From IMG/VR virus record IMGVR_UViG_3300038465_000091, positions 1-64,000 of that record: DNA of 64,000 nt; one strand, written 5' to 3'. Both the position numbers and the translations under genes were made by a program. This document shows, one piece after another, positions 16,777 through 63,775 of this stretch. Each line of letters opens with the position of its first letter. The stretch's first letter is position 1. The notes under the pieces are model-generated. The model was not told the origin of the DNA, ran no database searches, and saw only the letters and a list, made by a program, of their open reading frames with translations.

Positions 16777-16853
<77 letters not shown>

Positions 16854-18648: not shown

Positions 18649-18816
18649 TTAAAAATTCAACTTACTCGCCAGAATCTCAGGTCGAATTACAACTTTCGAC
18701 CAATCTGGTTGTTCGAACCATTCGGGGTGCTCGTAATAGTTACGGAGATGACTATGGATTGGAAGACCTTCATTATCTAGTATGCCAAATCCCGTCTCAT
18801 CAGTATCTTGCGGCAT
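18649..18816 (-). CDS. Small hypothetical protein (55 aa)
   Basis: Below the ORF-track cutoff; SD AAGGAG; begins MPQDTDETGFGILDNEGLP. Confidence 0.6.
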   Translation of the reverse strand: MPQDTDETGFGILDNEGLPIHSHLRNYYEHPEWFEQPDWSKVVIRPEILASKLNF

Positions 18817-18825
18817 TCAATCTCC

Positions 18826-19176
18826 TTAAAAGTCTGGAAAGAACGCGGTTGCTTTCTTTGCTTTGGGTGCCGCCTCAGCGGTATCTTCCGAAAGCTCGAT
18901 CTGCCCCTGTTCTCTCACGACTTCATCATACGGCTTACTGTTAATCTGAGCAAGCTCTGTTTCAAAACCACTATACAAGTTGCTGCCCGATGCCAGCTTG
19001 GTGAGGTGAGCGACCTCGCGTTCAGCGTCGGCCTTCTCTTCCAAAGTCACTGGGCTCTCGGCCAACCACACGTCGATGAACGATAGCTCGCCCTTCTCAG
19101 CGGCTTTCTTCCACGGGTCATAGGTCTTTACGTCAACCTTCTCGTGACCCTCTACGCCTACACGAATCTTTGACAT
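18826..19176 (-). CDS. Hypothetical protein
   Basis: Start reassigned to MSKIRVG behind TATTAG and SD GAGG. Confidence 0.65.
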   Translation of the reverse strand: MSKIRVGVEGHEKVDVKTYDPWKKAAEKGELSFIDVWLAESPVTLEEKADAEREVAHLTKLASGSNLYSGFETELAQINSKPYDEVVREQGQIELSEDTAEAAPKAKKATAFFPDF

Positions 19177-19279
19177 GGCGGTCCTCTGTCTAATAGGTTT
19201 GATATTCACCAAGTGCCTATAGGACGATACTGCTTTCGTTGGAAAAGAGCCGCGAGTTTTCGCAAAAACCACATAAATT

Positions 19280-19354
19280 TGGTCGGGGAGGCGAGATTCG
19301 AACTCGCGATCCCATGCTCCCGAAGCATGTGCGTTACCGCTACGCTACTCCCCG
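19280..19354 (-). tRNA. tRNA-Pro(CGG)
   Basis: CATGC-TTCGGGA-GCATG; CGGGGAG acceptor; CCA. Confidence 0.92.
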
Positions 19355-19358
19355 AAAT

Positions 19359-19531
19359 TGGTTGCAGGGCTGGGAGTCGAATTGAACCCAGCATCTCTCG
19401 GATCGCTGCTCAGCGTCTTGCGTCAACGTTGCTCGTCTATTTCCTTGCGGATCACCGTCTCACATCAACTTGCCAGCGCAACGACCCCGCGCACTTTCGT
19501 GCGGGATGTTCTGCCATTTGAACTACCTGCA
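19359..19531 (-). ncRNA. tRNA-framed RNA with a ~100-nt insert in place of the anticodon arm
   Basis: Acceptor TGCAGG/CCTGCA-A-CCA, D-arm GTTC..GAAC and T-arm GCTGGG/CCCAGC flank a long structured insert. Confidence 0.6.
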
Positions 19532-19565
19532 AACTCTTGCCGCCAGTCTTGCTACACGTGGCGGG

Positions 19566-19769
19566 TTACCCCACCTTACTCGAAAAACTTTTCTTGAACT
19601 CTTCAACGACGACTTCGAGGCTATGTCTTGCTTCCGCCTCATCCGCGCCATAACCTACGAGTTCTGCACCGTTGTGGTGCCCGAACTCGTTGAAGAAGAA
19701 AGGAAGTTCAACCCTCGCTTCATAGCTGTCGTGCTTCTCTTTGCCATCGTTGATGATTTTTGCATCCAT
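19566..19769 (-). CDS. Small protein, possible HicB-like N-terminal fold
   Basis: YEARV...LVGYGADEAEARHSL resembles the HicB G-x-T/D-x-x-EA pattern. Confidence 0.45.
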   Translation of the reverse strand: MDAKIINDGKEKHDSYEARVELPFFFNEFGHHNGAELVGYGADEAEARHSLEVVVEEFKKSFSSKVG

Positions 19770-20026
19770 AAAATTCCGATGGCGTATGAAGTGAGCATTG
19801 ATCCTTGGCTGAGCACCATCAACACCGTTTGCAAAATCTTGGGGCGACCTAAGCTGGCACTGGTACTTGCGTGGTCTCCAGCCATCGACGTATTATGCAC
19901 AGCCTGCGACCGAGTACCCGGCGACCTCGCAGACCGCTCCACCCCGTTCTTCGATACCTGCCTGATCCCACGTTGCAGACTTTCGTCTGTGCGAGTCAGC
20001 CCTCGGGCGGGGCACTTTCAAAACTT

Positions 20027-20116
20027 TGGTCAGGATGAGAGGATTTGAACCTCCAAGGTCATAAAGACACCTGCATCCGAGGCAGGACGGCTGCCAAGTT
20101 ACCGTTCTACACCCTG
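20027..20116 (-). tRNA. tRNA-Pro(CGG) with enlarged variable arm
   Basis: CCTGC-CTCGGAT-GCAGG; ~15-nt variable region; CCA. Confidence 0.85.
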
Positions 20117-20129
20117 ACATTGTAAAATT

Positions 20130-20216
20130 TGGTCGGGGTGGGGAGATTCGAACTCCCAGTGATCTTATCTCCCGCTTCCAAAGCGGGTCGGCTCCCAACT
20201 ACCGATTTACACCCCG
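20130..20216 (-). tRNA. tRNA-Pro(TGG) with enlarged variable region
   Basis: CCCGC-TTTGGAA-GCGGG; ~13-nt variable region; CCA. Confidence 0.87.
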
Positions 20217-20342
20217 ATTATGCGTTTTTCCGCCTAAAAGCGTTTTATACGGAAAACCGCCTAAAGCACAAAATCGAGGCAAATGTCTTGGAATTCAGTT
20301 GCTTACAGCGCCCCGATGCCTAGCAGCACGGGGTTGAGGCTC

Positions 20343-20414
20343 TTAGAGCACTTCACCCCCGCGCACGGTAGGCGTGCACGGTCGAAACATCGGGGTTGGT
20401 CGCATTGTGTTCAT
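20343..20414 (-). promoter_or_regulatory. Leader peptide ORF of the Pro/Met/Phe tRNA array (MNTMRPTPMFRPCTPTVRGGEVL)
   Basis: 23 codons with 4 Pro, 3 Met, 1 Phe (also 4 Thr, 3 Arg), lying between the promoter and the first tRNA-Pro. Confidence 0.6.
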
Positions 20415-20534
20415 AAAGTCGTCCCGATTCGTGCCCAGAGCCGTAGCTAAACTACAGATGCTCACGAATCGTAAGATTGGTGTGGGGCACGAGTTTCCAC
20501 CGTTCTGTAATCTGCGCCCTTCCCAATCTCTACT

Positions 20535-20568
20535 ATAATACCATGGAAGTTTGAATTTTAGTTAGGAA
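20535..20568 (-). promoter_or_regulatory. Phage promoter TTCCTAAC-N20-TATTAT
   Basis: Fixed-spacing motif shared with six other loci. Confidence 0.7.
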
Positions 20569-20758
20569 AATCGAAATTTATTTCCAAGGCACGGGGTCAT
20601 GGGCGTTCAGTTGTTCGCGGCGGTCCATAAGCTCCTGCCTTCGCGGTTCGTGTATTTCGGCTGCACGCCATCTACGATCAGCGGCTCCCGCGTGCCCTCC
20701 ACAACGACGTTCTTCCGACCCGTCCAAACTCTAGTCTTGGCGGATTTCTTCACGGCTT

Positions 20759-21325
20759 TCACAGTTCATCCTCCACGATTTGCGGCGAGGCGTTGTCAAA
20801 ACCGCCAGCACACGACTCACATTCCTGCCGCTTGGTCTTGCCGTGCTTGCACATCGGTTCAGCAGTTCCCAGTCCGTAAAACTGCCGTACTTCCATCAGC
20901 AGCCTACCGAGCCAATTCTCGCCGAGGGGTGCATGAGGAAAATCACACTTGCCCATGCACACGCCCCAGAACGTGTCGTGCCAGTGATTGCCTTCGATCA
21001 ACTCGGCTTGAAACGTGGAGATCAGCTTGCGCTTGGGAATGCTCGGCCTGAACTTCTGCATGAGCAGATCGCGCATGATACCGATCTTGACTTCTTCCCA
21101 GTCGGGACGTAGCTTCAAGGACCGTCCCATCCTCTTTGCTCTCGCGGACGTTACGCCGAGGTAACGGAACTTCTCACGTTGCGCTGCATCGAGCGTCTTT
21201 GCCGCTTGGTATGCATGTTCAACCGAGGTATACACCTCAACCATGGCGTCGGGCATCTCATGGGCGTAAATCATCCCATCGGTGGTGACCCATAGCCGAA
21301 CTTCGCCGAGTGCGAAGTTAGACAA
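20759..21325 (-). CDS. NADAR (YbiA/DUF1768) family protein
   Basis: FLSNF, SVEHAYQAAK, NHWHDTFWG, GENWLGRLLMEVR. The reading frame stays open upstream to about 21373. Confidence 0.9.
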   Translation of the reverse strand: MSNFALGEVRLWVTTDGMIYAHEMPDAMVEVYTSVEHAYQAAKTLDAAQREKFRYLGVTSARAKRMGRSLKLRPDWEEVKIGIMRDLLMQKFRPSIPKRKLISTFQAELIEGNHWHDTFWGVCMGKCDFPHAPLGENWLGRLLMEVRQFYGLGTAEPMCKHGKTKRQECESCAGGFDNASPQIVEDEL

Positions 21326-21369
21326 GAAAGCCCAAGCTCCGGTAAAACTATCGATTTTGGTTGGGAGTT

Positions 21370-23506
21370 TTATGTGCCCTCTGATCTGGAACTTCGGATT
21401 ATGGTTTTAGCAATGACTCTCGCTGCCAATGTTCGTTCGAGAGCTTCTGCAAACGCCATGCGGGTGCACTCTTCGCAACCGGCGGGGAACGATACGGGTG
21501 CGATCATGAGGGTAACCTTGGTGTCGTGTGGTCCGCAAACGTAACCATTTGTAGTTTCAGCTATTCTCAACATCTTCGTCCTCAATCATGACAGCCGCAT
21601 TTCTTCGGGCATTGAAAGATCAGTGGGCCTGTGGCGAATCCGTTGTACACCCCGCCAAGAGCACAACAGTCGCACTCGGCACGTCCAGCAGTCAGGATCG
21701 CCTGCCGCAGGTCGGCAATGTCAAAAGTAGGTGTCGGGTCAATCCCGTGCCATCCCTCAAGCATACTCACTGTCCGCTGCTTCGTCGCTGGAGATCACGC
21801 GGCAGTTGTCAGGACGGCATTCCGTCGCCGCCACGCACTCAGCTTCCAGTTCACACTCGGCTTCAATCTCCACCGTACCGCTGTATTCAACCTGATATTT
21901 CGGCATCATCATCCTCCATCGACAGTGGCAACTCTGCCGCACATTCGAGCCAATCCTTTTGAGTGGGCTCGTCCATAAGCTCCCAGTGCTCGTACATGTA
22001 GTCCAGCGACGAGGCGATCATCGCGTTCTTTTGCCTCACCAACTGGTTGTACGCTTCATTGTCACCACGGGCGAATGCCAGCATCACTGCCTTGACGACG
22101 ATCAGCAATTCCATGTGCCTCTTGGCACAGTTGTTACAGAATGTTTGAACGTCGTCCATATCGGGTAATACTGACTATTCGATTGTTCCGTCTTTGTGAA
22201 CCATCAGGATTTCTTCGCTGATGCGGTACGCCATGACCACTTCCTGATCGTAATACTTAGCGGTCATCCAGCAAATCTCCTCGATCTGGCGTCTGGTGCC
22301 GCTGATCTTGACGGGGATCATCCGCTCGGCGAACACGTTCTTGCTGACGGGGTGAACCCACTGACCTTTCTCTACGGGACGAATGGTCAAGCCGCCCGTG
22401 ATGGCACGGACGCGGGTATCCCACTTCTTGTGGAAGCCCTTGACATATTCGGTCTGGGTCCGATCAATCGTCGGCACCAAGATTTCCCAGAGTTCGTGCA
22501 TCATAAGTTCCCCTTCTTCAACATCTGGCGGACTTGATCGGGCGAAAACATAACTGGCACCCTGCCCACGCAAACCTTGGGGTGCTGCGCCTTAAGCCTC
22601 TCAATAACTTCCTCGATCCCCTGACGGTTTATGCCCGCGTCCATGATGATATTCAGGAGCTTTTCCAGCCCCTTCATCTCGCTTACCCGCATGAACCCGA
22701 TGTTCAACGGGTATTCCGTCCCGTCAGGGAGAATCGCGTACATCCCCATCGGTCGGTCCCTTGCCGTGCAAAATGGTGAGCGATCTCTATCGTGCCTCTG
22801 CCCATCATCGTACTCGACTCGGATCGAATTAGACTGGCTCGGCAATGTCGCTCTCTTTGAGAAGCTGGTACGTCATCTGGTACGGCAGGCGGTGCGAGCC
22901 CTCGGCGACATCCGCAACGGCGTTGTAGGTGTCAACCACCTTCTTGAGTTCGACGGTGGTTAGCGGGCGTACCAGAAGATCAATCTCTTCGCCAATCACG
23001 TTAGTCACTACGATAGCGGCGAGAGTGCCGTCACGGTCTACTGCAAGTCTTGAGAGTCCCATGTCTTCTCCTGAATTTTCTTAAGTGTCAACCAAACAGC
23101 TATTCGACGTACTAAGGGCTCCAATCTACTCGGCCCGAATACGGGCGTTTTACCGTCCGTGAGCAGCTTCATTTATTTTTCTCCAGTTTGGCAATCTCAG
23201 CATACATGTCCATGATGGGCTGAGGGGTGCGACTCACATGCCAGTTGTTCTCTTCCCAGTGCCGCACCTTCTCTTTCAGCAGTCGAAGATAGATTTGGTT
23301 ATCCATCAATCTAGCCCCCATTTGTTCAGCCAAATTTTGAACATTGTCCAACGAAGAAGCTCCGGGTTGCTGATCGGATGCCAGCCCTGAGCCGTGTCAT
23401 CGAGAGAGGTTAACCCGCGTTCGTCTTGAATGATGCACAGGTCCACTGGACAATCTGATGTGGCGGGAATCCACCAACACTCGTACCTGCCTGTTGTTGT
23501 GTACAC
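21370..23506 (-). CDS. Run of about nine tightly packed small hypothetical genes (e.g. 21370-21585, 21582-21770, 21887-22159, 22175-22507, 22501-22845, 22829-23062, 23306-23506)
   Basis: Overlapping start/stop codons in a common orientation; no recognisable domains. Confidence 0.55.
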
Positions 23507-23512
23507 GTGGTT

Positions 23513-23546
23513 ATTCTACCATGAAGGGAGAGGATTTGGTTAGGAA
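23513..23546 (-). promoter_or_regulatory. Phage promoter TTCCTAAC-N20-TAGAAT
   Basis: Fixed-spacing motif upstream of the small-gene run. Confidence 0.7.
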
Positions 23547-23636
23547 ATCGTGGTAAGTAACCGTTTTTGTTTACAATACGTTGGAGTCTGGGAATGACAG
23601 TTCGGACAATACTAAATGGTTTGGAAGTTCAAATTT

Positions 23637-23722
23637 TGGTGTCCGAAGGGGGACTTGAACCCCCACGACCTTGCGGTCACTGGCTCCTAAGGCCAGCGCG
23701 TCTGCCATTCCACCACTCGGAC
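23637..23722 (-). tRNA. tRNA-Leu(TAG)
   Basis: Class II cloverleaf; loop CTTAGGA; CCA. Confidence 0.95.
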
Positions 23723-23727
23723 AAATT

Positions 23728-23812
23728 TGGTGCGGCTAAGAGGAGTCGAACCTCCACGGGGTTGCCCCACTAGGGCTTGAGCCTAGCGCGTCTGCCATTC
23801 CGCCATAACCGC
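23728..23812 (-). tRNA. tRNA-Leu(CAA)
   Basis: Class II; loop CTCAAGC; CCA. Confidence 0.95.
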
Positions 23813-23921
23813 ATAATCAGCACCTTTGTACCGATTAAGCCTGTAAACCGTTGTAAGCGGCATATTTCCACTCCCGTCGCCATTTTGCGCTGAACAGTGA
23901 ATATAGCCTTTCGAGTAAATA

Positions 23922-24007
23922 TGGTGCCGCCGACAGGGATCGAACCTGCATGGCTGTAAACCACTGGATTCTGAGTCCAGCCTGTCTGCCAATTCCAGCA
24001 CGGCGGC
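23922..24007 (-). tRNA. tRNA-Leu(CAG)
   Basis: Class II; loop CTCAGAA; CCA. Confidence 0.95.
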
Positions 24008-24014
24008 AAAATTT

Positions 24015-24099
24015 TGGTGTGGCCGGAGGGACTTGAACCCTCACACCTTTCGGCATCACCCCCTCAAGATGACGTGTCTGCCAATTCCACCACGGCCAC
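24015..24099 (-). tRNA. tRNA-Leu(GAG)
   Basis: Class II; loop TTGAGGG; CCA. Confidence 0.93.
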
Positions 24100-24200
24100 A
24101 TACCGTTTCACCATCCGATGAAACCCCTCGAAACAGTGAAACTCGCGATATGCTTTATTGCATCAAACCGCCGACCTGATGTAATAAAGCACATCAAATT

Positions 24201-24290
24201 TGGTGTGCCTAAGAGGACTTGAACCTCCACGGGGGTATCAGCCCCAACGGACTCTCAGCCCGCCGCGTCTGCCAGTTTCGCCATAGACAC
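24201..24290 (-). tRNA. tRNA-Leu(GAG), second variant
   Basis: Class II; GCGGG-CTGAGAG-TCCGT; CCA. Confidence 0.85.
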
Positions 24291-24295
24291 AAATC

Positions 24296-24383
24296 TGGTG
24301 CCGGGAGCAGGATTCGAACCTGCGAACCTCCTAAGAGGGACTGCTTTACAGGCAGTTGGTTTTAACCGCTCACCCATCCCGGC
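24296..24383 (-). tRNA. tRNA-Tyr(GTA)
   Basis: ACTGC-CTGTAAA-GCAGT; long variable arm; CCA. Confidence 0.95.
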
Positions 24384-53037: not shown

Positions 53038-56000
53038 TTACACCTGTCCAATCACGACATAATTGAAAATTACGTTAGCTAAGGGAGCGGTGCCAACATT
53101 AACGGTGAAACCCGTCCACGCATTCGTTGCGCCTTGGTATGTAATCCAAATCGGATTCGCCGCGCCCAGATTTGATGTCGGAGTCACAACCAATATAGGC
53201 TGTCCCGCGCCTGTGTAATTGTTTACAAAACTGTACACAACGGTCGTGTTGCCTGAAAGCAGCGTCACCTGACCTGCGAAGTCCGTGTTGGCCGCTGGCG
53301 AATCCGCTTCGATAACGTTGTTTGGGCTAGTGTACCCATACGGAGTGTGACGAATAGCCTGAAGGCGACTGCCCACATCCACAGCACCGAGAACGTTCTG
53401 CTCTTGCGGGTTGACCTCATAAATAGCAAACCGCTTCGTTGCGCTGCCAACGTTCTGTCTCTGAATATAGATGTTGAACGAGTTGGTAATCGTACCCGAT
53501 GGGTCGCCGTTAGAAGTCAAAAATATACCATAGGCGTTGTCCATGTGGCTTCCACTGACAGACTGACCGATGTCCAGAACAAGTGCGGCGGCATTCGGTA
53601 CAGACGCGCCGTGGAAGTTGTTGACACTGATCGCCGCGCCAACGAGCCCGTACCACGGGCTTGATCCCGGTGAAGTTATGTTACCCGTGTTTTCATGATT
53701 TGTTCTGACGCGCAATCCAGTGACGCCTTGCGGAAACACCTGTGCTCCACTCACAGTAATTCCCGTTGATTGAATTGCCTGTACAACATCGAGGCCAGAA
53801 ATAAACTGATTGCCTGTGAACGGATTGCACTGCGAGAGGATACTGGCGCTATTGACTACCGAGTAACTGATTCCAGACCCGGAGTCCGCTGTCGGCCCGT
53901 AATCCGCATGAGTAAATGCTGCTTCGAACTGCGTACCTGACAGTCCTGTGGGAAGCACTACCACTGTGTGACGGTTCAAAAAGGTTGCCGCAGACAAGCC
54001 TGCAAACAGGCCAATTTCAACTCTATCTCCAGCGGACAGTGTGTTGACTGCTTGGAATGTCGCGATGTTGCTGGTAATCTGAATGCTCGTGATGCTCACA
54101 AACTGCGACGGCAGCGAATTTGTGGTGACAAACCTGTACCCAGAATAGGCTTGATAGGTGGCTAACTCTGAAAGCGTTGTCGGATCGAGTTGGTAGTCGG
54201 GCTTGCCTCCAAGTATCACCCCGCTTGTTTCGCCGACACCTAGAACGGTGAGAGCAGCGACGGCACCACCAGCTAAAGGCGTAATGTTCACGTCACCAAA
54301 GCTGTCTACCGAAACTACGGGGGTGCTGGGGGTTCCGTTTGAAAACCAATCTTGAATATCGCTTGCTGAGGCGTCACCCGTAACAGACAATGTTACGAAC
54401 GTGCCCGCTCCTCCACCACCCCCTGCGGGAATAGGAGCCGCTGAGAATAACCCCGTGCTCGCGTTATAACCAGTGAGGTACTCGTATTCTGGAGGTGAAC
54501 CCGCCAGAGTTGGGGCGAACGTTTGAGCTAAAACAAGGGCGACCCACTGAGTTCCCGTTACCGTGGAGCTAAGTACTTGTCCGCTGGTTCCGACCGAACT
54601 CGTGCTGTCCTTCAACGTGCCAGTCAAAGCTATGTTTGCGACAGCCAACGTACCACTTGCATCATTGCTCTGCCCGATAGACAGCGTGCCGGTGGGGTTC
54701 TCATAAATAGTGGTTCCAGTCGTGAGCTTTAGAGAGCGTTGGGAAGCAAAGTACGTTTGGCTCGGAGTGATGTCCAAAGCTATTGCTCCGTTGACGACCA
54801 GTGCTAACCCCCCGGCACCGTTGTTCACTCCCATTCCGTAATTTGTTTTACCAGCAACGGTAAAAGAGAACGCTGGGTTGGTAAGCGTTCCCGCTGTGGA
54901 TGCTTCAAACGTTGAAGCCTGTACTATTCCGCTTGCGTTTATCGCCGCAGCGGTCGCAGTACCAGTGAAAGCTGGACTGGCAAGTGTGGTGATAACGCCG
55001 GTGCTGCCGTATACGGATGTAACGCCTCCTCCGCCGCCTCCTGTCGCGGGCTGCCATACGGGTAGCCCAGCAACTACAGTCAATACCTGACCCGTTGTAC
55101 CGATGGGCAAACGCAGTGGGCCAAGCACTGGGGGAGAACCCGCCAGCCCTTCGTAAATCATATCCCCATCAGCGGTCATAGGATTAACGAAGGTGCCGCT
55201 AAGTATGCCCTCCAAGGAGACGCCCGAATCCTGTGTGTTACCAAGTTCATCGAATGTGACAATATCGCCAGCAGTGATGGCACCAGACCCAGATGGGACC
55301 GTGACGGCGGTAGCGGCTGAAATAGAGACTGCCCCATTGCCCCCACCCACGGCAAGAGCGCGACCTGTCAGGATGCCGCCGCCCAACGTGATCGAGGCAT
55401 ACGCCAAAATGTTTCCAACCATAGTGCTTGTGGCAACCGATGTGAATGAGCTTCCGACGCACCAAACTACGTTGGCTGCTTGAGCACCGTTGACCAAAAG
55501 AATTGACGCCCCGCTTTCGAGCGTGACGGTGGAGGCTGCGATAAACACAAAGATCGCGTTCGGATCGCCCTGAGCGTCAAGGGTGATCGTAGTCGGGATG
55601 TCCAATGCTCCACCAGAGAACACGCCCGCGTGATACACGCCGACGCCGCCCCCACCATCGTTCGTGGATAGGTTGGCGAGGCCCGTCTGAGTCGGGGTCA
55701 GTCCGCTGTAGTAGGTATACGCCGCCTGACCCGCAGTACGTGCCGCAGGAGCGTCGGTGTTGTCCACCGTAGCGGTAGGTGGGTTGAACCCCGTAATACT
55801 CATGGTCGGGGCAGAACCAATCTTGCCGCCTGTTATTGAAGTCGCGGGCGCTGCGTTTGTGATCCCGCTGTACGCCAGCAAAGCGTAGTTCGCGGACGAG
55901 CCGAGTTGCGTAGTGACTGGGGACGGAGGCGGTGCACCACTCGTCAACTGAACAAAAGCACCTGTGCCCTGCACGCTGCAAATCTGGGACGTTGCGAGAC

Positions 56001-56238
56001 AGCCCGAGATTTGAGTGAAATTAGTGCTGCCCACAAACAGTGACGAATCGATGACGCCACTAGGGTTGAGAACCACGGGAACGCCCGCTGATGCGGCCCC
56101 TAGCGACTGTACTGTAACACCATCGACAGCCGTAACGATATCAATCAGGTTTGATCCTGTTTGATTCGGCACAATCGGTGCTGCCACATCCTGATTAGGG
56201 TTTATGTTAAAGACGCAGATTCGCGTAGGACCATTCAT
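53038..56238 (-). CDS. Tail-fibre/virion protein with DUF3494 ice-binding-like domain
   Basis: Gly/Thr/Ser-rich modules; LGSSANYALLA.SGITN, GVY, TITLDAQGDPNAIFVF, NGAQAANVVW.VGSS, GNILA..SITL..G.LTGRALA motifs. Confidence 0.8.
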   Translation of the reverse strand: MNGPTRICVFNINPNQDVAAPIVPNQTGSNLIDIVTAVDGVTVQSLGAASAGVPVVLNPSGVIDSSLFVGSTNFTQISGCLATSQICSVQGTGAFVQLTSGAPPPSPVTTQLGSSANYALLAYSGITNAAPATSITGGKIGSAPTMSITGFNPPTATVDNTDAPAARTAGQAAYTYYSGLTPTQTGLANLSTNDGGGGVGVYHAGVFSGGALDIPTTITLDAQGDPNAIFVFIAASTVTLESGASILLVNGAQAANVVWCVGSSFTSVATSTMVGNILAYASITLGGGILTGRALAVGGGNGAVSISAATAVTVPSGSGAITAGDIVTFDELGNTQDSGVSLEGILSGTFVNPMTADGDMIYEGLAGSPPVLGPLRLPIGTTGQVLTVVAGLPVWQPATGGGGGGVTSVYGSTGVITTLASPAFTGTATAAAINASGIVQASTFEASTAGTLTNPAFSFTVAGKTNYGMGVNNGAGGLALVVNGAIALDITPSQTYFASQRSLKLTTGTTIYENPTGTLSIGQSNDASGTLAVANIALTGTLKDSTSSVGTSGQVLSSTVTGTQWVALVLAQTFAPTLAGSPPEYEYLTGYNASTGLFSAAPIPAGGGGGAGTFVTLSVTGDASASDIQDWFSNGTPSTPVVSVDSFGDVNITPLAGGAVAALTVLGVGETSGVILGGKPDYQLDPTTLSELATYQAYSGYRFVTTNSLPSQFVSITSIQITSNIATFQAVNTLSAGDRVEIGLFAGLSAATFLNRHTVVVLPTGLSGTQFEAAFTHADYGPTADSGSGISYSVVNSASILSQCNPFTGNQFISGLDVVQAIQSTGITVSGAQVFPQGVTGLRVRTNHENTGNITSPGSSPWYGLVGAAISVNNFHGASVPNAAALVLDIGQSVSGSHMDNAYGIFLTSNGDPSGTITNSFNIYIQRQNVGSATKRFAIYEVNPQEQNVLGAVDVGSRLQAIRHTPYGYTSPNNVIEADSPAANTDFAGQVTLLSGNTTVVYSFVNNYTGAGQPILVVTPTSNLGAANPIWITYQGATNAWTGFTVNVGTAPLANVIFNYVVIGQV

Positions 56239-56828
56239 TATCTAGCCACTCCTGTACGAGCTAATCGATTTTCTCTAAACTGCCGCAACGCCGCCGTCAT
56301 ACATACCCACTCTTCATAGGTGTAGCGGTGTGCTTTACCGTGGTTACAAACCCCACAGCAAACGACAAGGTTGCTTTTGACGTATTCCAAACCATTGTCC
56401 TTACGGTCGAGATAGTACCTTCCATAGGTTTGCCTGTCGCTATAAGGCATCCATGTGATGTGAGCCCCGCAATAATGACATTCGTTGATTTTCGTGAATT
56501 CTAAAAATTCCCCGAACGATAAATCAACGACTCTGACTTTTCTGCGTGTGCGATGAACAAGAGCGTTGTAAGCGTGCTCAAATGGAAGGAATTCACTTCG
56601 CTTGGCTTCCGAAGTACGCTCCCGTTGCAAACAGCCGCAACTTTCAGTGTTGGGTCGTGCCCCCTTCCTTCCCAAATTAGTCCCAAAAACTTCTGTCAAG
56701 TTGCCGCAGACGCACTCACACGAATACTTGGCGGGCTTCCCCTTGTCCGATACCCGAGCAAGTACCTTCAGTCTACCGAACGGCTTTCCGATCTTGGTGT
56801 CTATTTTCATCTGTTCCTCGCAGGCCAC
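56238..56828 (-). CDS. HNH homing endonuclease
   Basis: IGKPFGRLKV, CHYCG...LDRKDNGLEYVKSNLVVCCGVCNHGK. Confidence 0.88.
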   Translation of the reverse strand: MACEEQMKIDTKIGKPFGRLKVLARVSDKGKPAKYSCECVCGNLTEVFGTNLGRKGARPNTESCGCLQRERTSEAKRSEFLPFEHAYNALVHRTRRKVRVVDLSFGEFLEFTKINECHYCGAHITWMPYSDRQTYGRYYLDRKDNGLEYVKSNLVVCCGVCNHGKAHRYTYEEWVCMTAALRQFRENRLARTGVAR

Positions 56829-59785: not shown

Positions 59786-60283
59786 ATGGAAACCCAAACC
59801 TGTACTAAATGCCGCGACCCCAAATCTGTAGATGAGTTCGCCTTCAAAAGTAAGGCGGCGGGCAAGCGCAACTCGTGGTGCAAGTCATGCCAAAAGCCCT
59901 ACAAAGACCAGCATTACCAAAACCACAAACAAGTGTACATCAAGAAAGCTCACGAGTATCGAGCGGATTACAAAGCGCGGATTTATGCTCTCCTCGCCGA
60001 ATACTACAAGCAACACCCGTGTGTCGATTGCGGGGCGGATGACTTCATTGTTTGTCAATCTGACCACGTGAGGGGCAAGAAGTTTGAGGGTATCTCAAGG
60101 CTTATTCAACAGGATGCTTCGTGGGAAAGAATACTAGAAGAACTTAAGAAGTGTGAGACTCGATGCGCTAATTGCCACATGCGAAAAACAGCCAAGCAAT
60201 TTGGTTGGTACAAAGATTTGGTAGCGTACAGGGGAATCGAACCCCTCATCATTCGCTTGAAAGGCGAAGGTCCAAACCGATAG
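59786..60283 (+). CDS. HNH endonuclease (tRNA-array family), antisense
   Basis: CVDCG...SDHVRGKK...KCETRCANCH; the C-terminus overlaps tRNA-Glu on the opposite strand. Confidence 0.88.
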   Translation: METQTCTKCRDPKSVDEFAFKSKAAGKRNSWCKSCQKPYKDQHYQNHKQVYIKKAHEYRADYKARIYALLAEYYKQHPCVDCGADDFIVCQSDHVRGKKFEGISRLIQQDASWERILEELKKCETRCANCHMRKTAKQFGWYKDLVAYRGIEPLIIRLKGEGPNR

Positions 60284-60294
60284 ACGGGTACGCC
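60219..60294 (-). tRNA. tRNA-Glu(TTC)
   Basis: TTCGC-CTTTCAA-GCGAA; CCA. Confidence 0.92.
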
Positions 60295-60310
60295 ATTGGA
60301 CTTCTAAAAT

Positions 60311-60385
60311 TGGTGCGCCGTGAGGGATTCGAACCCCCGATCTTTTGCGTGTCATGCAAACGATTTGCCACTAATCTAACAGCGC
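60311..60385 (-). tRNA. tRNA-Val(GAC)
   Basis: TTTGC-ATGACAC-GCAAA; CCA. Confidence 0.9.
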
Positions 60386-60386
60386 G

Positions 60387-60484
60387 TGTACCCGAGAGGG
60401 ATCGAACCTCCGACCTGCCTCCAGCAACCCATGCCGAAGCATAAAAGCTGATGGAGACCGCTCTGCCGGTTGAGCTACAGGCAC
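60387..60484 (-). ncRNA. tRNA body with a ~30-nt structured insert in the anticodon loop
   Basis: Normal acceptor, D and T arms; GTCTC/GAGGC stem encloses CAGC/GCTG and an ATGC-TTCG-GCAT hairpin. Confidence 0.65.
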
Positions 60485-60562
60485 AAACAAAAACTGGTGG
60501 AAAGGAAATCCCGGCAAGGATTTTACATTGCTACATGTCTGCAACAACCCACCCATAAAAAT

Positions 60563-60639
60563 TGGTGCGGCTTGGACTGAATTTCACGTCCGACCCCTCC
60601 CCCGTTATAGGAGTGCTCTGTTCCTGAGCTAAAGCCAAC
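60563..60639 (-). tRNA. Degenerate tRNA, nominal Val(AAC)
   Basis: D-arm GCTC..GAGC; CTCCT-ATAACGG-GGGAG; aberrant T-loop; CCA. Confidence 0.5.
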
Positions 60640-60642
60640 ATC

Positions 60643-60718
60643 TGGTGGACCTAGTGGGATTCGAACCCACGACCTCCGCAGTGCGAGCGCAGCGTTCTCC
60701 CAACTGAACTACAGGCCC
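60643..60718 (-). tRNA. tRNA-Ala(CGC)
   Basis: Loop CTCGCAC; G3:U70; CCA. Confidence 0.93.
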
Positions 60719-60852
60719 AAAACTTTAGACGGTGAGATTCGATACTCACATAAGCGCATCGACTAGCGATATAGCCGATCTCATCATTCAATGAGCTTAG
60801 GACGCTATTTATTTTTCGCCCTCTCTACGGGCGCTTAACTTACGTCTAAACT

Positions 60853-60928
60853 TGGTGCACCTTGAGGGATTCGAACTCTCGACTCCCACCGTGTGAAAGT
60901 GGTACTCTGGCCGCTGAGTTAAAGGTGC
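60853..60928 (-). tRNA. tRNA-Val(CAC)
   Basis: CCACT-TTCACAC-GGTGG; CCA. Confidence 0.92.
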
Positions 60929-60996
60929 AAAATGGTGGAGGCACGTTAAGGGCTTTCTTGCTCGCCCACCCTTACGGTCGTTCACCCCCGTAAACT

Positions 60997-61073
60997 TGGT
61001 AGCGCCTGCGGGAGTCGAACCCGCCGTCATTCGAGTGAGAGTCGAAGGTCCAAAGCCGATAGACGGAGACGCC
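60997..61073 (-). tRNA. tRNA-Glu(CTC)
   Basis: TTCGA-CTCTCAC-TCGAA; CCA. Confidence 0.92.
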
Positions 61074-61143
61074 ACAATCATATAATTGGCCTCTACAGTG
61101 AAATTCTTCACGATTTTGGCCGTTTTATACGACGTAATAAAAT

Positions 61144-61219
61144 TGGTGGACCTAAGGGGGCTCGAACCCCTGACCTCTCGAATGCCATTCGAACGCTCTC
61201 CCAACTGAGCTACAGGCCC
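61144..61219 (-). tRNA. tRNA-Ala(GGC)
   Basis: Loop ATGGCAT; G3:U70; CCA. Confidence 0.93.
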
Positions 61220-61227
61220 AACGACAG

Positions 61228-61301
61228 TGACGCAGTGTATCGGATTTGAACCGATGTTTCCCGCAGGCGTCCTCAACCAGCCTAGACGAACACCTATCAC
61301 C
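61228..61301 (-). ncRNA. tRNA-like RNA lacking a proper anticodon arm
   Basis: Glu/Asp-type D-arm GTCT..AGGAC and T-arm ATCGG-TTCAAAT-CCGAT are separated by only ~13 nt. Confidence 0.55.
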
Positions 61302-61338
61302 ATCTGTGCGCGTGTACATCGCGCAGTCTTTCAAAACT

Positions 61339-61413
61339 TGGAGCGGAACACGGGGCTCGAACCCGCGACCTGTTCGTTGGCAACGAACCGCTCTACCACT
61401 GAGCTAGTTCCGC
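61339..61413 (-). tRNA. tRNA-Gly(GCC)
   Basis: Loop TTGCCAA; GCGGAAC acceptor; U73; CCA. Confidence 0.95.
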
Positions 61414-61659
61414 AAACTTTCAAAAGCAAAAGCATGTGTGTCCCAGTCGGTCGATAGGATTACCAGCCCCTACCACAAGCGGTTCGGGCTTTCGCCGCAA
61501 CCGCCGAACCTCAATCTGAGGTCGTCGAGTCTCGCAGCCGAAGCTACGACGTTTTTCTACCCACTTAAGGGAGTCCACGCGGATACACACAACTCATTTG
61601 GGGAGGATGGGTGTTAATCCAGTTTTGACCTCGTGCCAACACACGAGCCTCCCCCGATC

Positions 61660-61734
61660 TGGAGCGAGCAACGGGAATCGAACCCGTCTCATCGGCTTGG
61701 AGGGCCGGGGCACCGCCAGTTATACCTTACTCGC
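61660..61734 (-). tRNA. tRNA-Gly(TCC), C33 variant
   Basis: Loop CCTCCAA; U73; CCA. Confidence 0.82.
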
Positions 61735-61745
61735 TTAAAATATTC

Positions 61746-62158
61746 GTGTTGAACCTGTAGCCGGGATTTTGTCCGCCAGCTTACGCCAGTTGGACGACCA
61801 TTCCTCTAGGCGTTGCATCGCTACAACGCTCAAGCACCCTACCCGCTGATTACCCGCCTCTTGCGAAGCGAACGGATCGAACACAATCCTGCTCAGCCTA
61901 TTTGGGCTTGCTGCACGTGGAGATTGCTCGTTTCACCCGAACTGAATCGGCTCGTCTCTGTAGCTCTAATCGTCAACACCCTTGCGGGTGCCGCCCAGCC
62001 GTTAGCTGGCACGCTGTTCTTTGCAGTCCCGAACTTCCTCCCCTGCGCTCAACGCCGGACTTGGTTGGGTATTTCACATCAACACTGCCGATGCGAATCT
62101 TACACGCTTCCAAGCACAGGACGTATATCTACGCAGCAGCGGTCGTCCAATTCAACAC
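61746..62158 (-). ncRNA. rnpB: RNase P RNA (bacterial type A-like)
   Basis: P1 GTGTTGAA/TTCAACAC; P2 ACGACCG/TGGTCGT; P4 strands GAGGAAGTTCGGG and ACAAAATCCCGGCTA; GGGTGAAACG and GAGCAA core motifs. Confidence 0.9.
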
Positions 62159-62234
62159 AAATTTTCAAAGACCTAATAGACGATGCAAAAGCTTTGTTCT
62201 GCACTCAATCACCCGATAAACTGGGCGATGATTT

Positions 62235-62309
62235 TGGAGCACCCGGTCGGTGTCGAGCCGACTCATAATGGTTTTGCAGACCATTGCGTTCCCGTTTCGC
62301 CACGGATGC
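62235..62309 (-). tRNA. tRNA-Cys(GCA)
   Basis: ATGGT-CTGCAAA-ACCAT; U73; CCA. Confidence 0.9.
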
Positions 62310-62313
62310 AAAT

Positions 62314-62694
62314 TTAAATGCGTTTCAATACCTGTGCTTCTTCAAAAGTCGCTAGGCGGTGATGATTAGCACAAAGCACATCACACTTTGCGGCTTCTCG
62401 CTTCACTCGTACAAGGGACCAACCCTTCTTACGGGTTTCAGATAAATTCAGTTCTTTTGTCGCCCTATCGCGATGGGCAAAATCTAAACAGACTGGATGT
62501 TCCCGCCATCCGCAAACTTTACAACCCATCTCCATTTTGTAAGCGTCCAGCCATTGACAAATAACGGCTATCCGCTTTTTATCATTCTTCCGCACCGCTT
62601 TCAAGTGTCGTGCCTTCCGAACTGGATCGGCGTAATACCGCTTCCAGTACCCAGCACGATATTCCTTGCGCTTCTTGCAATCCTTCAACGGCAT
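62314..62694 (-). CDS. HNH endonuclease (tRNA-array family)
   Basis: CKVCG...CLDFAHRD...KCDVLCANHHR. Confidence 0.88.
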   Translation of the reverse strand: MPLKDCKKRKEYRAGYWKRYYADPVRKARHLKAVRKNDKKRIAVICQWLDAYKMEMGCKVCGWREHPVCLDFAHRDRATKELNLSETRKKGWSLVRVKREAAKCDVLCANHHRLATFEEAQVLKRI

Positions 62695-62699
62695 AAATT

Positions 62700-62773
62700 T
62701 GGCGGGGATACGGAGAATTGAACTCCGATTTTATGATAGACAGTCAAATGTCCTACCCTTGAACGATATCCCC
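62700..62773 (-). tRNA. tRNA-Asp(GTC)
   Basis: Loop CTGTCTA; G73; CCA. Confidence 0.9.
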
Positions 62774-62785
62774 GTTCTTAAATTT

Positions 62786-62860
62786 TGGTGGACACGGGGG
62801 GATTTGAACCCCTTCTTTCACTTTGCAAGAGTGACGCATTCCCAGTTATGCTACCGGCCC
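62786..62860 (-). tRNA. tRNA-Ala(TGC)
   Basis: TCACT-CTTGCAA-AGTGA; G3:U70; irregular lower acceptor stem; CCA. Confidence 0.82.
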
Positions 62861-63075
62861 ATTTTTGCTGGTTTCGCGACACTCTTCGTGCCGTGTACCA
62901 GATCAAACTCTAATTGCCGAACCACCATCAGGTCCATCTTGAACAGGGCTTCATCCTCGGTGTCGGCAGATGCGACTAGGCCGAGGGTGGGGTGAACCAC
63001 TTTGAATCCCCAATCATACCTCTCGACCTCCACGGTCGTTACCAGCTTGACGATGCGTTGTCTGTCGCGTTTCAT
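62851..63075 (-). CDS. Small HicB-like protein
   Basis: SD GGAG; W.F.V.HPTLGLVASADTEDEAL resembles the HicB N-terminal domain. Confidence 0.55.
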   Translation of the reverse strand: MKRDRQRIVKLVTTVEVERYDWGFKVVHPTLGLVASADTEDEALFKMDLMVVRQLEFDLVHGTKSVAKPAKMGR

Positions 63076-63090
63076 CTTCTCTCCGAATCT

Positions 63091-63169
63091 TGGTACGCCG
63101 AGAGGGACTCGAACCCCCGATAATACTTGCTTGTAGGGCAAGTGGTTTCGCCGCTCACGCCATCGGCGT
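63091..63169 (-). tRNA. tRNA-Val(TAC), C33 variant
   Basis: CTTGC-CCTACAA-GCAAG; irregular D-stem; CCA. Confidence 0.8.
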
Positions 63170-63180
63170 AAATTTACCGC

Positions 63181-63214
63181 AAAAACAAAAAGGACGCCTT
63201 TTTAGGGGCGTCCT
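63181..63214 (-). terminator. Attenuator terminator upstream of the Val/Ala/Gly/Asp/Glu/Cys array
   Basis: AGGACGCC-CCTAAAAA-GGCGTCCT followed by TTTTGTTTTT, about 11 nt before tRNA-Val. Confidence 0.92.
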
Positions 63215-63238
63215 CGGAATTCGTTGGTTTTAGGCTAT

Positions 63239-63385
63239 TTAGCCACCCCAACCATCCAAGGACACCATATCTCCTACCGGCGCCGCGTCAGCGGCGACAG
63301 TACCGCGTTCGGCTGTACAAGCCGACAGGACCACGCCTGCACAGACGACCGTCACGACAACACCGTCTTGGAGAATGGAGTTCAT
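63239..63385 (-). promoter_or_regulatory. Leader peptide ORF (MNSILQDGVVVTVVCAGVVLSACTAERGTVAADAAPVGDMVSLDGWGG)
   Basis: 48 aa: 10 Val, 7 Ala, 7 Gly, 4 Asp, 2 Cys, 1 Glu; its 3' end forms a 12-bp antiterminator arm; TATTGT element upstream. Confidence 0.85.
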
Positions 63386-63700
63386 AAGCGTCTCTATTTA
63401 CAATACTCGGTATTCAGGAAACTTGCAACAACTATTTTTCAGAAAAGTTTGAGGGCGCAACCACGGACGAACCGTGTGATCTTCTGTCTTGCTACGGCTA
63501 TCAGCCGCCTTCCGAACTGCGCCCCGATGAAAATACATCGGCTACAGTAACCCTGCACGTTGAACTGGTGCCAGCTAGAGTTCGGGACCGTTGCCACCGT
63601 TGCACCTGAGGTACACCGGATTATGCGGGTCATGACTCCCGTGACAGTGGGTTTTAGCCCTAGCCAGCCGTGCACAGTATGCAGCCGAATCTCAAAATTT

Positions 63701-63775
63701 TGGTGGACCTAGAGGGAATTGAACCCCCGACATCAGCCTTGCAAAGGCTGCGTTCTCCCGCTGAACTATAGGCCC
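63701..63775 (-). tRNA. tRNA-Ala(TGC)
   Basis: CAGCC-TTTGCAA-GGCTG; G3:U70; CCA. Confidence 0.95.

What the first reader, a model, noticed from the sequence alone, without database searches (positions are those of the whole stretch)
55290..55910. Ice-binding (DUF3494-like) domain built into a 1066-aa tail-type protein
Residues ~110-315 follow the DUF3494 beta-solenoid motif series, flanked by Gly/Thr-rich fibre-like modules. An ice-binding domain on a virion could aid freeze survival or adsorption in cold soil or peat, or may have been repurposed for binding (inference).
Basis: partly seen in the sequence, partly recalled or inferred. Interest (0 to 1): 0.65.

Follow-up and report, generated by a model that had tools for sequence, protein, structure and literature searches.

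The report
Ice-binding-type domain in phage fibre
A giant bacteriophage from frozen peat and permafrost carries a genuine "ice-binding protein" domain inside a long, three-stranded tail-fibre-like protein (and five more copies elsewhere in its genome), which suggests, but does not prove, that its particles can stick to ice.

Summary
ORF 53038-56238 (-), 1066 aa, matches Pfam PF11999 (DUF3494/Ice_binding) at E 7.7e-29 over residues 121-309. That region folds with pLDDT above 90 into the DUF3494 beta-solenoid, and all 31 significant PDB fold matches are solved ice-binding proteins.

The window belongs to a 223.5-kb jumbo-phage contig found only in peat and permafrost metagenomes. A fibre-type reading of the protein is supported:
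- The N-terminus plus DUF3494 is conserved among homologues, while the C-terminus is variable.
- The shaft is Gly/Thr-rich with poly-Gly hinges.
- The C-terminal beta-sandwich resembles tailspike and tail-fibre tips.
- Three copies of residues 880-1066 are predicted to trimerise (0.89 against controls 0.00).

New points beyond the finding:
- The genome holds six DUF3494 domains in five large ORFs.
- At least 210 stretches in IMG/VR encode relatives. These form an old viral radiation separate from the closest cellular copies found, which are 44% identical or less.
- The ice-binding B-face is kept: 23 of 27 outward residues are G/A/S/T, including the equivalents of AnpIBP S153 and T156.

Ice binding itself and presence in virions remain untested. 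PF11999 genes on Arctic viral contigs have been reported before as putative cryoprotective host-helper genes, so I rate this a new variant of a known kind.

The parts
53038..56238 (-). Whole gene, 1066 aa (P0001). The ATG at 56238 overlaps the stop of the upstream ORF (TAATG), with GGAG 10 nt upstream.
55927..56238 (-). N-terminal module, residues 1-104. It is conserved (54-82% identity) in homologues, including some that lack DUF3494. Presumed virion-attachment part (inference).
   Evidence: It has low pLDDT as a monomer. Atlas leads are viral only.
55291..55926 (-). DUF3494 / Ice_binding beta-solenoid with its bracing alpha-helix (helix at residues 163-178), residues 105-316.
55039..55290 (-). 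Residues 317-400: conserved linker module ending in the first G-T-T-G-Q-V-L...W motif and a Gly6 hinge. It is still conserved in orthologues up to residue 396. The roughly 50-aa motif is repeated in other viral proteins (P0023, P0026, P0031).
54379..55038 (-). Residues 401-620: Gly/Thr/Ala/Ser-rich shaft (GAST 0.56). It holds an SPAFTG motif at 421, a second GQVL motif at 550 and a Gly5 hinge at 606-610.
   Evidence: The protein diverges from its orthologues from here on.
53854..54114 (-). Module A, residues 709-795: an approximately 80-aa domain that occurs in tandem (several copies per protein) in giant metagenomic proteins. Two of those relatives give weak Pfam E1_FCCH hits.
   Evidence: Weak paralogy to ORFs 107948-112219 and 112219-114918.
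53296..53853 (-). Residues 796-981: low confidence as a monomer. Residues 880-964 form an extended inter-chain interface in the predicted trimer.
53041..53295 (-). Module B, residues 982-1066: a six-strand beta-sandwich that always lies at the extreme C-terminus of many proteins of varied length. It resembles tailspike and tail-fibre C-terminal domains and H-type lectins.
56238..56828 (-). Upstream 196-aa ORF. It has PHROG matches to HNH endonuclease and endonuclease VII and is translationally coupled to the fibre gene. The same order is seen in a related phage contig (L020).
52257..52922 (-). Downstream 221-aa ORF with no family match. It follows the gene on all four contigs that carry the identical protein, and is replaced by other small ORFs where the C-terminus differs (L020).

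Best explanation
The gene encodes a homotrimeric, fibre-type structural (receptor-binding-type) protein of an uncultured jumbo phage from peat and permafrost. Its parts, in order, are as follows. A short conserved N-terminal module probably anchors it to the particle. A complete DUF3494 beta-solenoid comes next, which would give three per trimer. Gly-rich hinged shaft segments follow. The distal part is variable and ends in a small lectin-like beta-sandwich knob that would contact the host surface.

The DUF3494 module is conserved across phages whose distal ends differ, so it most likely serves a host-independent adhesion function. I consider the most likely ligand to be ice. In that reading, the flat Thr/Ser/Ala/Gly B-face adsorbs to ice grains in freezing peat. 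This would hold virions at ice-water interfaces and limit local ice recrystallisation.

Shown here: the domain identity and fold, the phage origin, the cold habitat, the modular conservation pattern, and the multi-copy viral radiation. Predicted: the trimer and the likeness of the C-terminal knob. Inferred: location in the virion, the anchoring role of the N-terminus, and ice as the ligand.

My layered odds are: real DUF3494 fold 0.98; fibre-type structural protein about 0.8; ice binding in nature about 0.4.
For: Domain:
- PF11999 at E 7.7e-29.
- PDB sequence hits are to experimentally characterised IBPs.
- The model has pLDDT above 90, and all 31 significant fold hits are DUF3494 IBPs.

B-face, mapped through the 7bwx alignment onto the AnpIBP ice-binding segments listed in PMC7277481:
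- 23 of 27 outward positions are G/A/S/T.
- S263 and T266 correspond to AnpIBP S153 and T156, whose Tyr mutants keep only 17% of activity.
- The pattern is conserved in 28 homologues.
- The Thr-dominated column 4 and the Ser/Thr/Gly column 2 match what PMC12337378 reports for frozen-sediment DUF3494s.

Phage origin and habitat:
- Portal, DNA polymerase, UvsX-like recombinase, helicases and 27 tRNA genes are present.
- The source is a 223.5-kb IMG/VR record.
- All 20 runs holding the gene are peat or permafrost metagenomes, from 18 studies.

Fibre nature:
- Residues 2-396 are 54-87% identical in homologues, while the rest differs.
- The C-terminal part has almost no full-length relatives.
- The best relative of the C-terminal region carries Mtd_N.
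- The C-terminal sandwich matches tailspike and fibre tips at Z 6.8-7.8, and BFVD hits include tail-fibre and K1-lyase C-terminal proteins.
- The trimer of residues 880-1066 scores 0.89 against a best control of 0.00. That mark was reached by 21 of 30 solved homo-oligomers and 0 of 23 single chains. Contact agreement between runs is at least 92% and pLDDT at least 81.

Recurrent use of the domain:
- Six DUF3494 domains lie in five ORFs of this genome. One is a 2070-aa ORF with five He_PIG Ig stretches that sits next to a lysin-like gene.
- At least 210 related stretches occur in IMG/VR, several contigs holding two.
- The paralogues are old and each has an orthologue in another viral contig.
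Against: - No Pfam or PHROG tail-fibre family matches the protein.
- The gene lies between a helicase and HNH-like and phosphoesterase genes, not in a recognisable tail module.
- The Z scores for the C-terminal knob are below 8, a range where a common beta-sandwich arrangement can score by chance.
- The Atlas hits are leads only, with scores of 0.90 or less.
- The conserved B-face residues are largely family-wide features of PF11999, so they do not separate ice binders from other DUF3494 proteins.
- DUF3494 is also described in substrate-binding proteins and in temperate organisms (PMC12337378).
- A module conserved next to the anchor could simply be structural.
- RNA evidence is weak. Short, 100%-identical contigs occur in three metatranscriptome runs, which could be carried-over DNA.
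- No activity or virion data exist.
Confidence: 0.42

Rival explanations
1. The protein is a virion fibre as above, but the DUF3494 solenoid binds a non-ice ligand. This could be a polysaccharide, the EPS or peat matrix, or a conserved cell-envelope polymer. In that case it acts as a primary, reversible adhesion module, as Ig-like and lectin domains do on other phages.
For: DUF3494 is described as occurring in substrate-binding as well as ice-binding proteins, and in temperate and epiphytic organisms (PMC12337378). Bacterial relatives combine it with adhesin-type Ig domains (Pfam lists). The 2070-aa paralogue pairs it with He_PIG Ig domains. The 1160-aa paralogue has weak parallel-beta-helix and rhamnogalacturonidase hits, a tailspike-like lead. 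A beta-solenoid is a common glycan-binding scaffold in phage receptor-binding proteins (established knowledge).
Against: Every solved relative is an active ice binder. The B-face keeps its small-residue, Thr-rich character. The phage is found only in freezing habitats. The domain is conserved across phages with different distal ends, which argues against a strain-specific receptor.
Confidence: 0.3
2. The DUF3494 unit has no ligand here. It is a rigid structural spacer or assembly element of the fibre, retained because it folds well.
For: It lies in the conserved proximal part next to the presumed anchor. The conserved surface residues are family-wide.
Against: The domain appears at very different positions: N-proximal, at residue about 860 of 2070, and as tandem pairs. 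It occurs in proteins with unrelated N-termini. That pattern fits a portable functional module better than a fixed structural element. The six copies have been kept as old paralogues.
Confidence: 0.12
3. The protein is not part of the virion. It is a phage-carried helper gene (an AMG) whose product is released at lysis, or acts in or on the cell, to protect the host or progeny from freezing. This is how PF11999 genes on Arctic marine viral contigs were interpreted.
For: Rahlff et al. 2024 (PMC11515562) list three vOTUs with PF11999 as putative cryoprotection AMGs. The gene lies among non-structural genes.
Against: By inspection, the first 40 residues have no hydrophobic signal-peptide-like segment, whereas classical IBPs are secreted. 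The 1066-aa modular fibre architecture, the predicted intertwined trimer and the tailspike-like tip would be unnecessary for a soluble cryoprotectant. The variable C-terminus behaves like a host-range determinant.
Confidence: 0.1

Closest known systems
Single-domain microbial DUF3494 ice-binding proteins: EfcIBP 6eio, AnpIBP 7bwx, FfIBP 4nu2, LeIBP 3uyu, TisAFP 3vn3, ColAFP 3wp9
   Same: The same Pfam family and fold: a beta-solenoid with triangular cross-section braced by one long helix. TM is 0.72-0.87 and identity 21-33%. The B-face composition and the two functionally tested AnpIBP positions are conserved.
   Different: Those are small (about 220-250 aa), secreted, monomeric proteins of cells. 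Here the domain is an internal module of a 1066-aa, signal-less, predicted trimeric phage protein. Activity is unknown.
Multi-domain DUF3494 proteins proposed as ice adhesins or tandem IBPs: SfIBP_1 of Shewanella frigidimarina (6bg8, Vance et al. 2018, cited in PMC11645318) and the two-domain IBPv (5uyt)
   Same: DUF3494 is attached to non-ice-binding domains that tether it to a larger body. The tandem-domain paralogue at 200688-203201 mirrors IBPv. The He_PIG Ig plus DUF3494 paralogue mirrors the Ig plus DUF3494 layout.
   Different: There the tethered body is a bacterial cell, here presumably a virus particle. The accompanying domains are unrelated, being phage fibre modules.
Phage tail fibres and tailspikes with a conserved anchor and an exchangeable distal tip: R2 pyocin fibre 6cl6, Pam1 tailspike 7eea, LKA1 gp49 4ru4, AP22 gp53/gp54, Bordetella phage Mtd
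   Same: A conserved N-terminus with a variable C-terminus, a trimer, a small C-terminal beta-sandwich at the tip (Z 6.8-7.8), and a relative carrying Mtd_N.
   Different: There is no detectable sequence membership in their families. None of those carries a DUF3494 domain. The gene is not in a tail-gene cluster.
PF11999 'ice-binding-like' genes on Arctic Ocean viral contigs (Rahlff et al. 2024, Microbiome 12:218, PMC11515562)
   Same: The same Pfam family on viral contigs from a cold habitat.
   Different: That study reports three hits, read as host-cryoprotection AMGs, with no architecture given. Here the domain sits in fibre-type proteins, six times in one genome, within a large soil and peat viral radiation.

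Membership tests
DUF3494 / Ice_binding (PF11999) | Profile match above Pfam's gathering score over the full domain | tested here: met
   101.3 bits against a cut-off of 28.7, covering profile positions 2-205 of 208. 105.5 bits in the genome search.
DUF3494 / Ice_binding (PF11999) | Discontinuous beta-solenoid with triangular section and one long alpha-helix along a face | tested here: met
   The AF2 model has pLDDT above 90 over residues 105-315, with the helix at 163-178. The top 31 Foldseek PDB hits are all DUF3494 IBPs, TM up to 0.87.
DUF3494 / Ice_binding (PF11999) | Flat B-face of small or hydroxyl residues, including positions shown by mutation to matter in AnpIBP | tested here: met
   Tested by alignment mapping only, with no coordinates available. 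23 of 27 outward positions are G/A/S/T, and S263/T266 correspond to S153/T156.
DUF3494 / Ice_binding (PF11999) | Measured ice binding: thermal hysteresis, recrystallisation inhibition, ice shaping | not testable with these tools
   Needs recombinant protein and ice assays.
Classical secreted microbial IBP | N-terminal secretion signal and a small single- or double-domain protein | tested here: not met
   By inspection, the first 40 residues have no hydrophobic signal-like stretch; no predictor was run. The protein is 1066 aa with at least six modules. NCBIfam IBP_CFB equivalog gives 38.9 bits against a cut-off of 400.
Phage tail fibre / receptor-binding protein | Encoded by a tailed phage | tested here: met
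   Portal, DNA polymerase, UvsX-like recombinase, helicases and a lysin are present, and the source is an IMG/VR viral record.
Phage tail fibre / receptor-binding protein | Sequence membership in a known fibre or spike family | tested here: not met
   No Pfam, PHROG or NCBIfam fibre family matches the protein itself. Only a relative of the C-terminal region carries Mtd_N.
Phage tail fibre / receptor-binding protein | Homotrimer with intertwined shaft | tested here: met
   This is a prediction only. Three copies of residues 880-1066 score 0.89 against a best control of 0.00, and residues 880-964 are all in the interface.
Phage tail fibre / receptor-binding protein | Conserved proximal part with an exchangeable distal part | tested here: met
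   Residues 2-396 are conserved at 54-87%, and the distal parts are unrelated among homologues.
Phage tail fibre / receptor-binding protein | Distal tip with the fold of known fibre or spike tips | tested here: inconclusive
   The seven best VIA matches are all phage tailspike or fibre C-termini, but their Z of 6.8-7.8 is within the range of common arrangements. BFVD supports the match weakly.
Phage tail fibre / receptor-binding protein | Located in the tail or baseplate gene module | tested here: not met
   The neighbours are a helicase, an HNH-like ORF, an HhH protein and a metallophosphoesterase. The position is syntenic in a related contig.
Phage tail fibre / receptor-binding protein | Present in purified virions | not testable with these tools
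   The phage is uncultured, so this needs proteomics or cryo-EM.

The most novel reading that the evidence does not exclude
These phages build true ice adhesins into their particles. Several different fibres and spikes would each display DUF3494 solenoids, so that virions bind ice grains in freezing peat. This would be a virus-borne, host-independent adaptation for overwintering and for meeting hosts in the liquid films around ice. It would have been maintained as an old, diversified gene family across a lineage of large soil phages.
Probability: 0.3. Interest if true: 0.8.

Novelty: new variant of a known kind. Interest (0 to 1): 0.6.

Why it matters
How viruses persist and stay infective through freeze-thaw cycles in permafrost and peat is largely unknown. 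A structural, particle-borne ice-binding module would be a concrete and testable mechanism. It would differ from the "helper gene for the host" idea used so far for viral PF11999 hits.

The finding also extends the DUF3494 family to a new carrier (virus particles) and a new architecture (trimeric fibres). It offers a set of six diverged natural domains from one genome for structure-activity work on ice binding.

If the domain binds something other than ice, it would be a clean case for defining the non-ice function of DUF3494, which is still open.

Tried and rejected
- PHROGs on the protein and on ten very large neighbouring-module ORFs gave nothing useful, because the structural genes are too divergent.
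- tblastn against 50,697 GenBank phage genomes found no match with the whole protein, or with the domain alone at E<=1. BLAST's low-complexity filter may contribute, so I treat this only as 'no close relative in isolates'.
- Synechococcus phage S-SKS1 is named in PMC11515562 as holding homologues. Its record has no PF11999 match at E<=0.01.
- The first MAFFT alignment of C-terminal relatives (A2) wrongly stacked module B segments on module A. I discarded it and rebuilt the alignment as A3.
- The monomer AF2 model of residues 620-1066 was confident only for 984-1066. The N-terminal residues 1-101 and 317-420 were also low. I therefore make no fold claim for those parts.
- The alignment-based scan of genome contigs failed for lack of a conserved block. 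The single-protein scan that replaced it finds only closer relatives, so the 44% ceiling for cellular copies is a lower bound on similarity, not proof that no closer donor exists.
- The careful tree did not finish, so only the quick IQ-TREE result is used. Sampling of viral and cellular rows was biased by how they were fetched.
- Metatranscriptome contigs cover short pieces only and cannot show transcription.
- I rejected contamination or a bacterial origin for the contig, given the phage gene content and the IMG/VR record.
- I rejected a recent capture of the domain from a host, given the old paralogues that each have viral orthologues.
- No signal-peptide predictor was available, so absence of a signal rests on inspection.
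Full report
**1. What is at the coordinates**

The finding lies inside one long minus-strand ORF, 53038-56238, of 1066 aa. The ATG overlaps the stop of the upstream ORF (TAATG), with GGAG 10 nt upstream. JGI, ENA and Logan gene calls give exactly this protein on four independent contigs. The finding's coordinates 55290-55910 correspond to residues 110-316.

Pfam PF11999 (Ice_binding, DUF3494) matches residues 121-309. It covers profile positions 2-205 of 208 at E 7.7e-29 and 101 bits, against a gathering score of 28.7. No other Pfam family matches at E<=1, and no PHROG matches.

By sequence, the best solved relatives are experimentally studied ice-binding proteins:
- EfcIBP 6eio, E 3.6e-17
- IBPv 5uyt
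- AnpIBP 7bwx
- the Cryosericum IBPs
- SfIBP_1 6bg8
- FfIBP

An AlphaFold2 model of residues 1-420, built on 28 homologues, has pLDDT above 90 over about residues 105-315, with the long helix at 163-178. All 31 Foldseek PDB hits at E<=1e-3 are DUF3494 IBPs, with TM 0.72-0.87 normalised to the target. The next hits have E above 0.2.

**2. Whose gene it is**

The window is the first 64 kb of a 223,506-bp IMG/VR viral record, which is linear and 71% complete by CheckV. The window holds these genes:
- a portal-like gene
- a 1203-aa DNA polymerase
- a UvsX-like recombinase
- helicases
- an HNH-like gene
- a metallophosphoesterase
- 27 tRNA genes in two clusters

This is an uncultured jumbo phage. 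Near-complete copies of the gene (0.97-1.00 of sampled words) are held by six runs from five studies, four of them marked as possible sources of this DNA. Partial matches occur in fourteen more runs. All 20 holding runs are labelled peat or permafrost metagenome, from 18 studies in all.

Three peat metatranscriptome runs contain short contigs 100% identical to pieces of the gene. This is compatible with expression but does not show it.

**3. Architecture of the protein**

Homologues from metagenomes share residues 2-396 at 54-87% identity and then diverge completely. Some relatives keep the N-terminal module but lack DUF3494 (P0013, P0024). A related contig keeps the same gene order, with a 189-aa ORF overlapping the start, but encodes a 1357-aa version. 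So the proximal third, including DUF3494, is conserved and the distal part is exchangeable.

The shaft (residues 401-620) is 56% Gly/Ala/Ser/Thr. It has poly-Gly hinges at 400-405 and 606-610, two G-x-x-G-Q-V-L...W motifs and an SPAFTG motif. From my own knowledge these motifs recall phage fibre repeats. That is a lead, not a test.

The word-based search found only two relatives of residues 620-1066. This left the protein open, so I used the exhaustive search. It gave 230 hits at E<=1e-3, which resolve into two portable modules:
- Module A covers about residues 709-795. It is about 80 aa and is tandemly repeated in giant proteins, with six copies detected in one.
- Module B covers residues 982-1066. 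It always sits at the extreme C-terminus of proteins of many lengths.

The best relative, P0035, carries Pfam Mtd_N, the N-terminus of the Bordetella phage tropism determinant. Like our gene, it lies alone among non-structural genes of a large phage contig.

The model of residues 620-1066 is confident only for 984-1066, a six-strand beta-sandwich. Its seven best matches among 48,161 PDB representatives are all C-terminal domains of phage tailspikes or fibres, at Z 6.8-7.8:
- Pam1 tailspike
- K64-1 depolymerase
- K1 lyase
- LKA1 gp49
- AP22 gp54
- R2 pyocin fibre (two entries)

H-type lectins follow. The tool warns that Z below 8 can be a common arrangement, so I count this as suggestive. BFVD hits point the same way.

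Three copies of residues 880-1066 are predicted to form a trimer, with score 0.89 against a best control of 0.00. That mark was reached by 21 of 30 solved homo-oligomers and 0 of 23 single chains. Contact agreement between runs is at least 92% and pLDDT at least 81. Residues 880-964, which are disordered in the monomer model, form a continuous interface. That behaviour is expected of an intertwined fibre shaft.

Two points count against a simple 'tail fibre' label:
- No fibre family matches the protein itself.
- The gene is not in a tail module.

**4. The domain is a recurrent module of this phage lineage**

The genome holds six PF11999 domains in five ORFs:
- the ORF under study
- a 2070-aa ORF (97142-103354) with five He_PIG Ig stretches, inside a block of very large plus-strand ORFs next to a lysin-like gene
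- an 1160-aa ORF (175126-178608) with weak parallel-beta-helix and rhamnogalacturonidase hits downstream of the domain (a lead only)
- a 479-aa ORF (198515-199954)
- an 837-aa ORF (200688-203201) with two tandem domains

A pattern scan of IMG/VR found 210 stretches encoding relatives at 35-83% identity. Many lie on contigs of 85-186 kb, and several contigs hold two. The closest cellular copies reached by the more limited genome scan are 44% identical or less and come from several phyla.

I built a quick maximum-likelihood tree of 96 domains. The cellular rows cluster together (2 label changes). The six copies of this genome fall in at least five separate places, most beside a copy from another viral contig. 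The paralogues are therefore old and there is no sign of recent capture from a host. Two caveats apply: sampling was biased and the careful search did not finish.

**5. Does it bind ice?**

This cannot be settled here. The following points favour ice binding.
- I mapped the AnpIBP ice-binding segments (PMC7277481) through the 7bwx alignment. They give these B-face rows in P0001: T145/S147/T149, S124-A129, G210-P215, S236-E241, S263-V268, A281-G286 and G302-S307.
- Of the 27 outward positions, 23 are Gly, Ala, Ser or Thr.
- S263 and T266 correspond to AnpIBP S153 and T156, whose Tyr mutants keep 17% of activity.
- The pattern holds across 28 homologues.
- A Thr-dominated column 4 and a mixed Ser/Thr/Gly column 2 are what PMC12337378 reports for DUF3494 proteins of frozen sediments.
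- The habitat freezes.
- The domain is conserved among phages with different distal tips, which fits an invariant ligand.

The following points count against it.
- These residues are largely family-wide features.
- The same paper describes DUF3494 as occurring in substrate-binding proteins and in temperate organisms.
- Conservation next to an anchor could be structural.

I put ice binding in nature at about 0.4, a non-ice adhesion role at about 0.3, a purely structural role at about 0.1, and a non-virion cryoprotectant at about 0.1.

**6. Comparison with what is known**

The domain is a member of PF11999 by sequence and by fold. It is not a classical secreted IBP:
- By inspection it has no signal-like N-terminus.
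- It is a 1066-aa multi-module protein.
- It scores 38.9 bits against the 400-bit equivalog cut-off of NCBIfam IBP_CFB.

It works most like the tethered DUF3494 proteins proposed as ice adhesins (SfIBP_1) and like tandem IBPv, but the carrier would be a virus particle. As a phage protein it behaves like a modular receptor-binding fibre, without sequence membership in any fibre family.

As for prior art, one paper reports three PF11999 hits on Arctic Ocean vOTUs and reads them as host-cryoprotection AMGs (PMC11515562). No paper in the searchable library links DUF3494 to phage structural proteins. The isolate phage named in that paper has no PF11999 match here, and no GenBank phage genome matched.

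**7. Verdict**

Its functional idea is plausible but unproven. What is new is the context: a bona fide DUF3494 solenoid used repeatedly as a module of fibre- and spike-type proteins in a lineage of large peat and permafrost phages. I rate it a new variant of a known kind, interest 0.6. Nothing in this work called for a referred step.

Noticed in passing
window 14060-24383 and 60219-63775: There are 27 tRNA genes in two minus-strand clusters. They include five tRNA-Leu, three tRNA-Met(CAT) and four tRNA-Ala, an unusually large complement even for a jumbo phage.
   Followed up: no
G000:C1:97142-103354 (+), locus L009:142-6354: A 2070-aa ORF has five He_PIG Ig-like stretches and a DUF3494 domain at residues 877-1065. 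It sits in a run of very large plus-strand ORFs (75-115 kb) with no PHROG matches, followed two genes later by a lysin-like 435-aa ORF. This is the likely tail or baseplate module.
   Followed up: partly
G000:C1:175126-178608 (+), locus L013:5126-8608: An 1160-aa ORF has an N-proximal DUF3494 domain, plus weak, below-cut-off hits to a rhamnogalacturonidase model and to the parallel beta-helix repeat. It may be a tailspike-type depolymerase carrying the same module.
   Followed up: no
G000:C1:200688-203201 (-) and 198515-199954 (-), locus L014: Two neighbouring ORFs of 837 aa and 479 aa carry DUF3494. The 837-aa one has two tandem domains, the layout of the solved two-domain IBPv.
   Followed up: partly
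window 53854-54114 (residues 709-795): Module A is an approximately 80-aa unit found in tandem in metagenomic proteins of 1775-2108 aa, with six copies detected in one of them. Two of these proteins give weak Pfam E1_FCCH hits. The unit has weak similarity to two large ORFs of this genome, 107948-112219 and 112219-114918.
   Followed up: partly
window 56238-56828 (-): A 196-aa ORF matches PHROG HNH endonuclease and endonuclease VII families but no Pfam family. It is translationally coupled to the fibre gene, and a 189-aa ORF occupies the same position in the related contig L020. Whether it is a nuclease or has a role in fibre assembly is open.
   Followed up: no
locus L022:4288-5625: The best relative of the C-terminal region (P0035, which carries Mtd_N) is a lone, oppositely oriented gene. 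It lies among ClpX-like, ClpS, PP2C phosphatase, dCMP deaminase and metallophosphoesterase genes of another large phage contig. Scattered fibre genes seem typical of these phages.
   Followed up: no
locus L021 (465-kb contig): A DUF3494 protein (P0016, 817 aa, 61% identical over residues 78-381) lies on a 465-kb contig full of small unannotated ORFs, with glycosyltransferases and a DNA methylase. This may be a megaphage relative.
   Followed up: no
window 53164-53401, 54697-55019, 55851-56247, 56542-56748: Short contigs 100% identical to the window occur in three peat metatranscriptome runs from three studies. They hint at in-situ transcription of this gene and its upstream neighbour but do not prove it.
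   Followed up: partly
window 8215-11826 (-) and 3767-6394 (-): A 1203-aa DNA polymerase (PHROG 17, E 2e-80) lies close to an 875-aa portal-like protein (PHROG 16240, E 3e-22). Replication and head genes are interleaved rather than arranged in separate modules.
   Followed up: no
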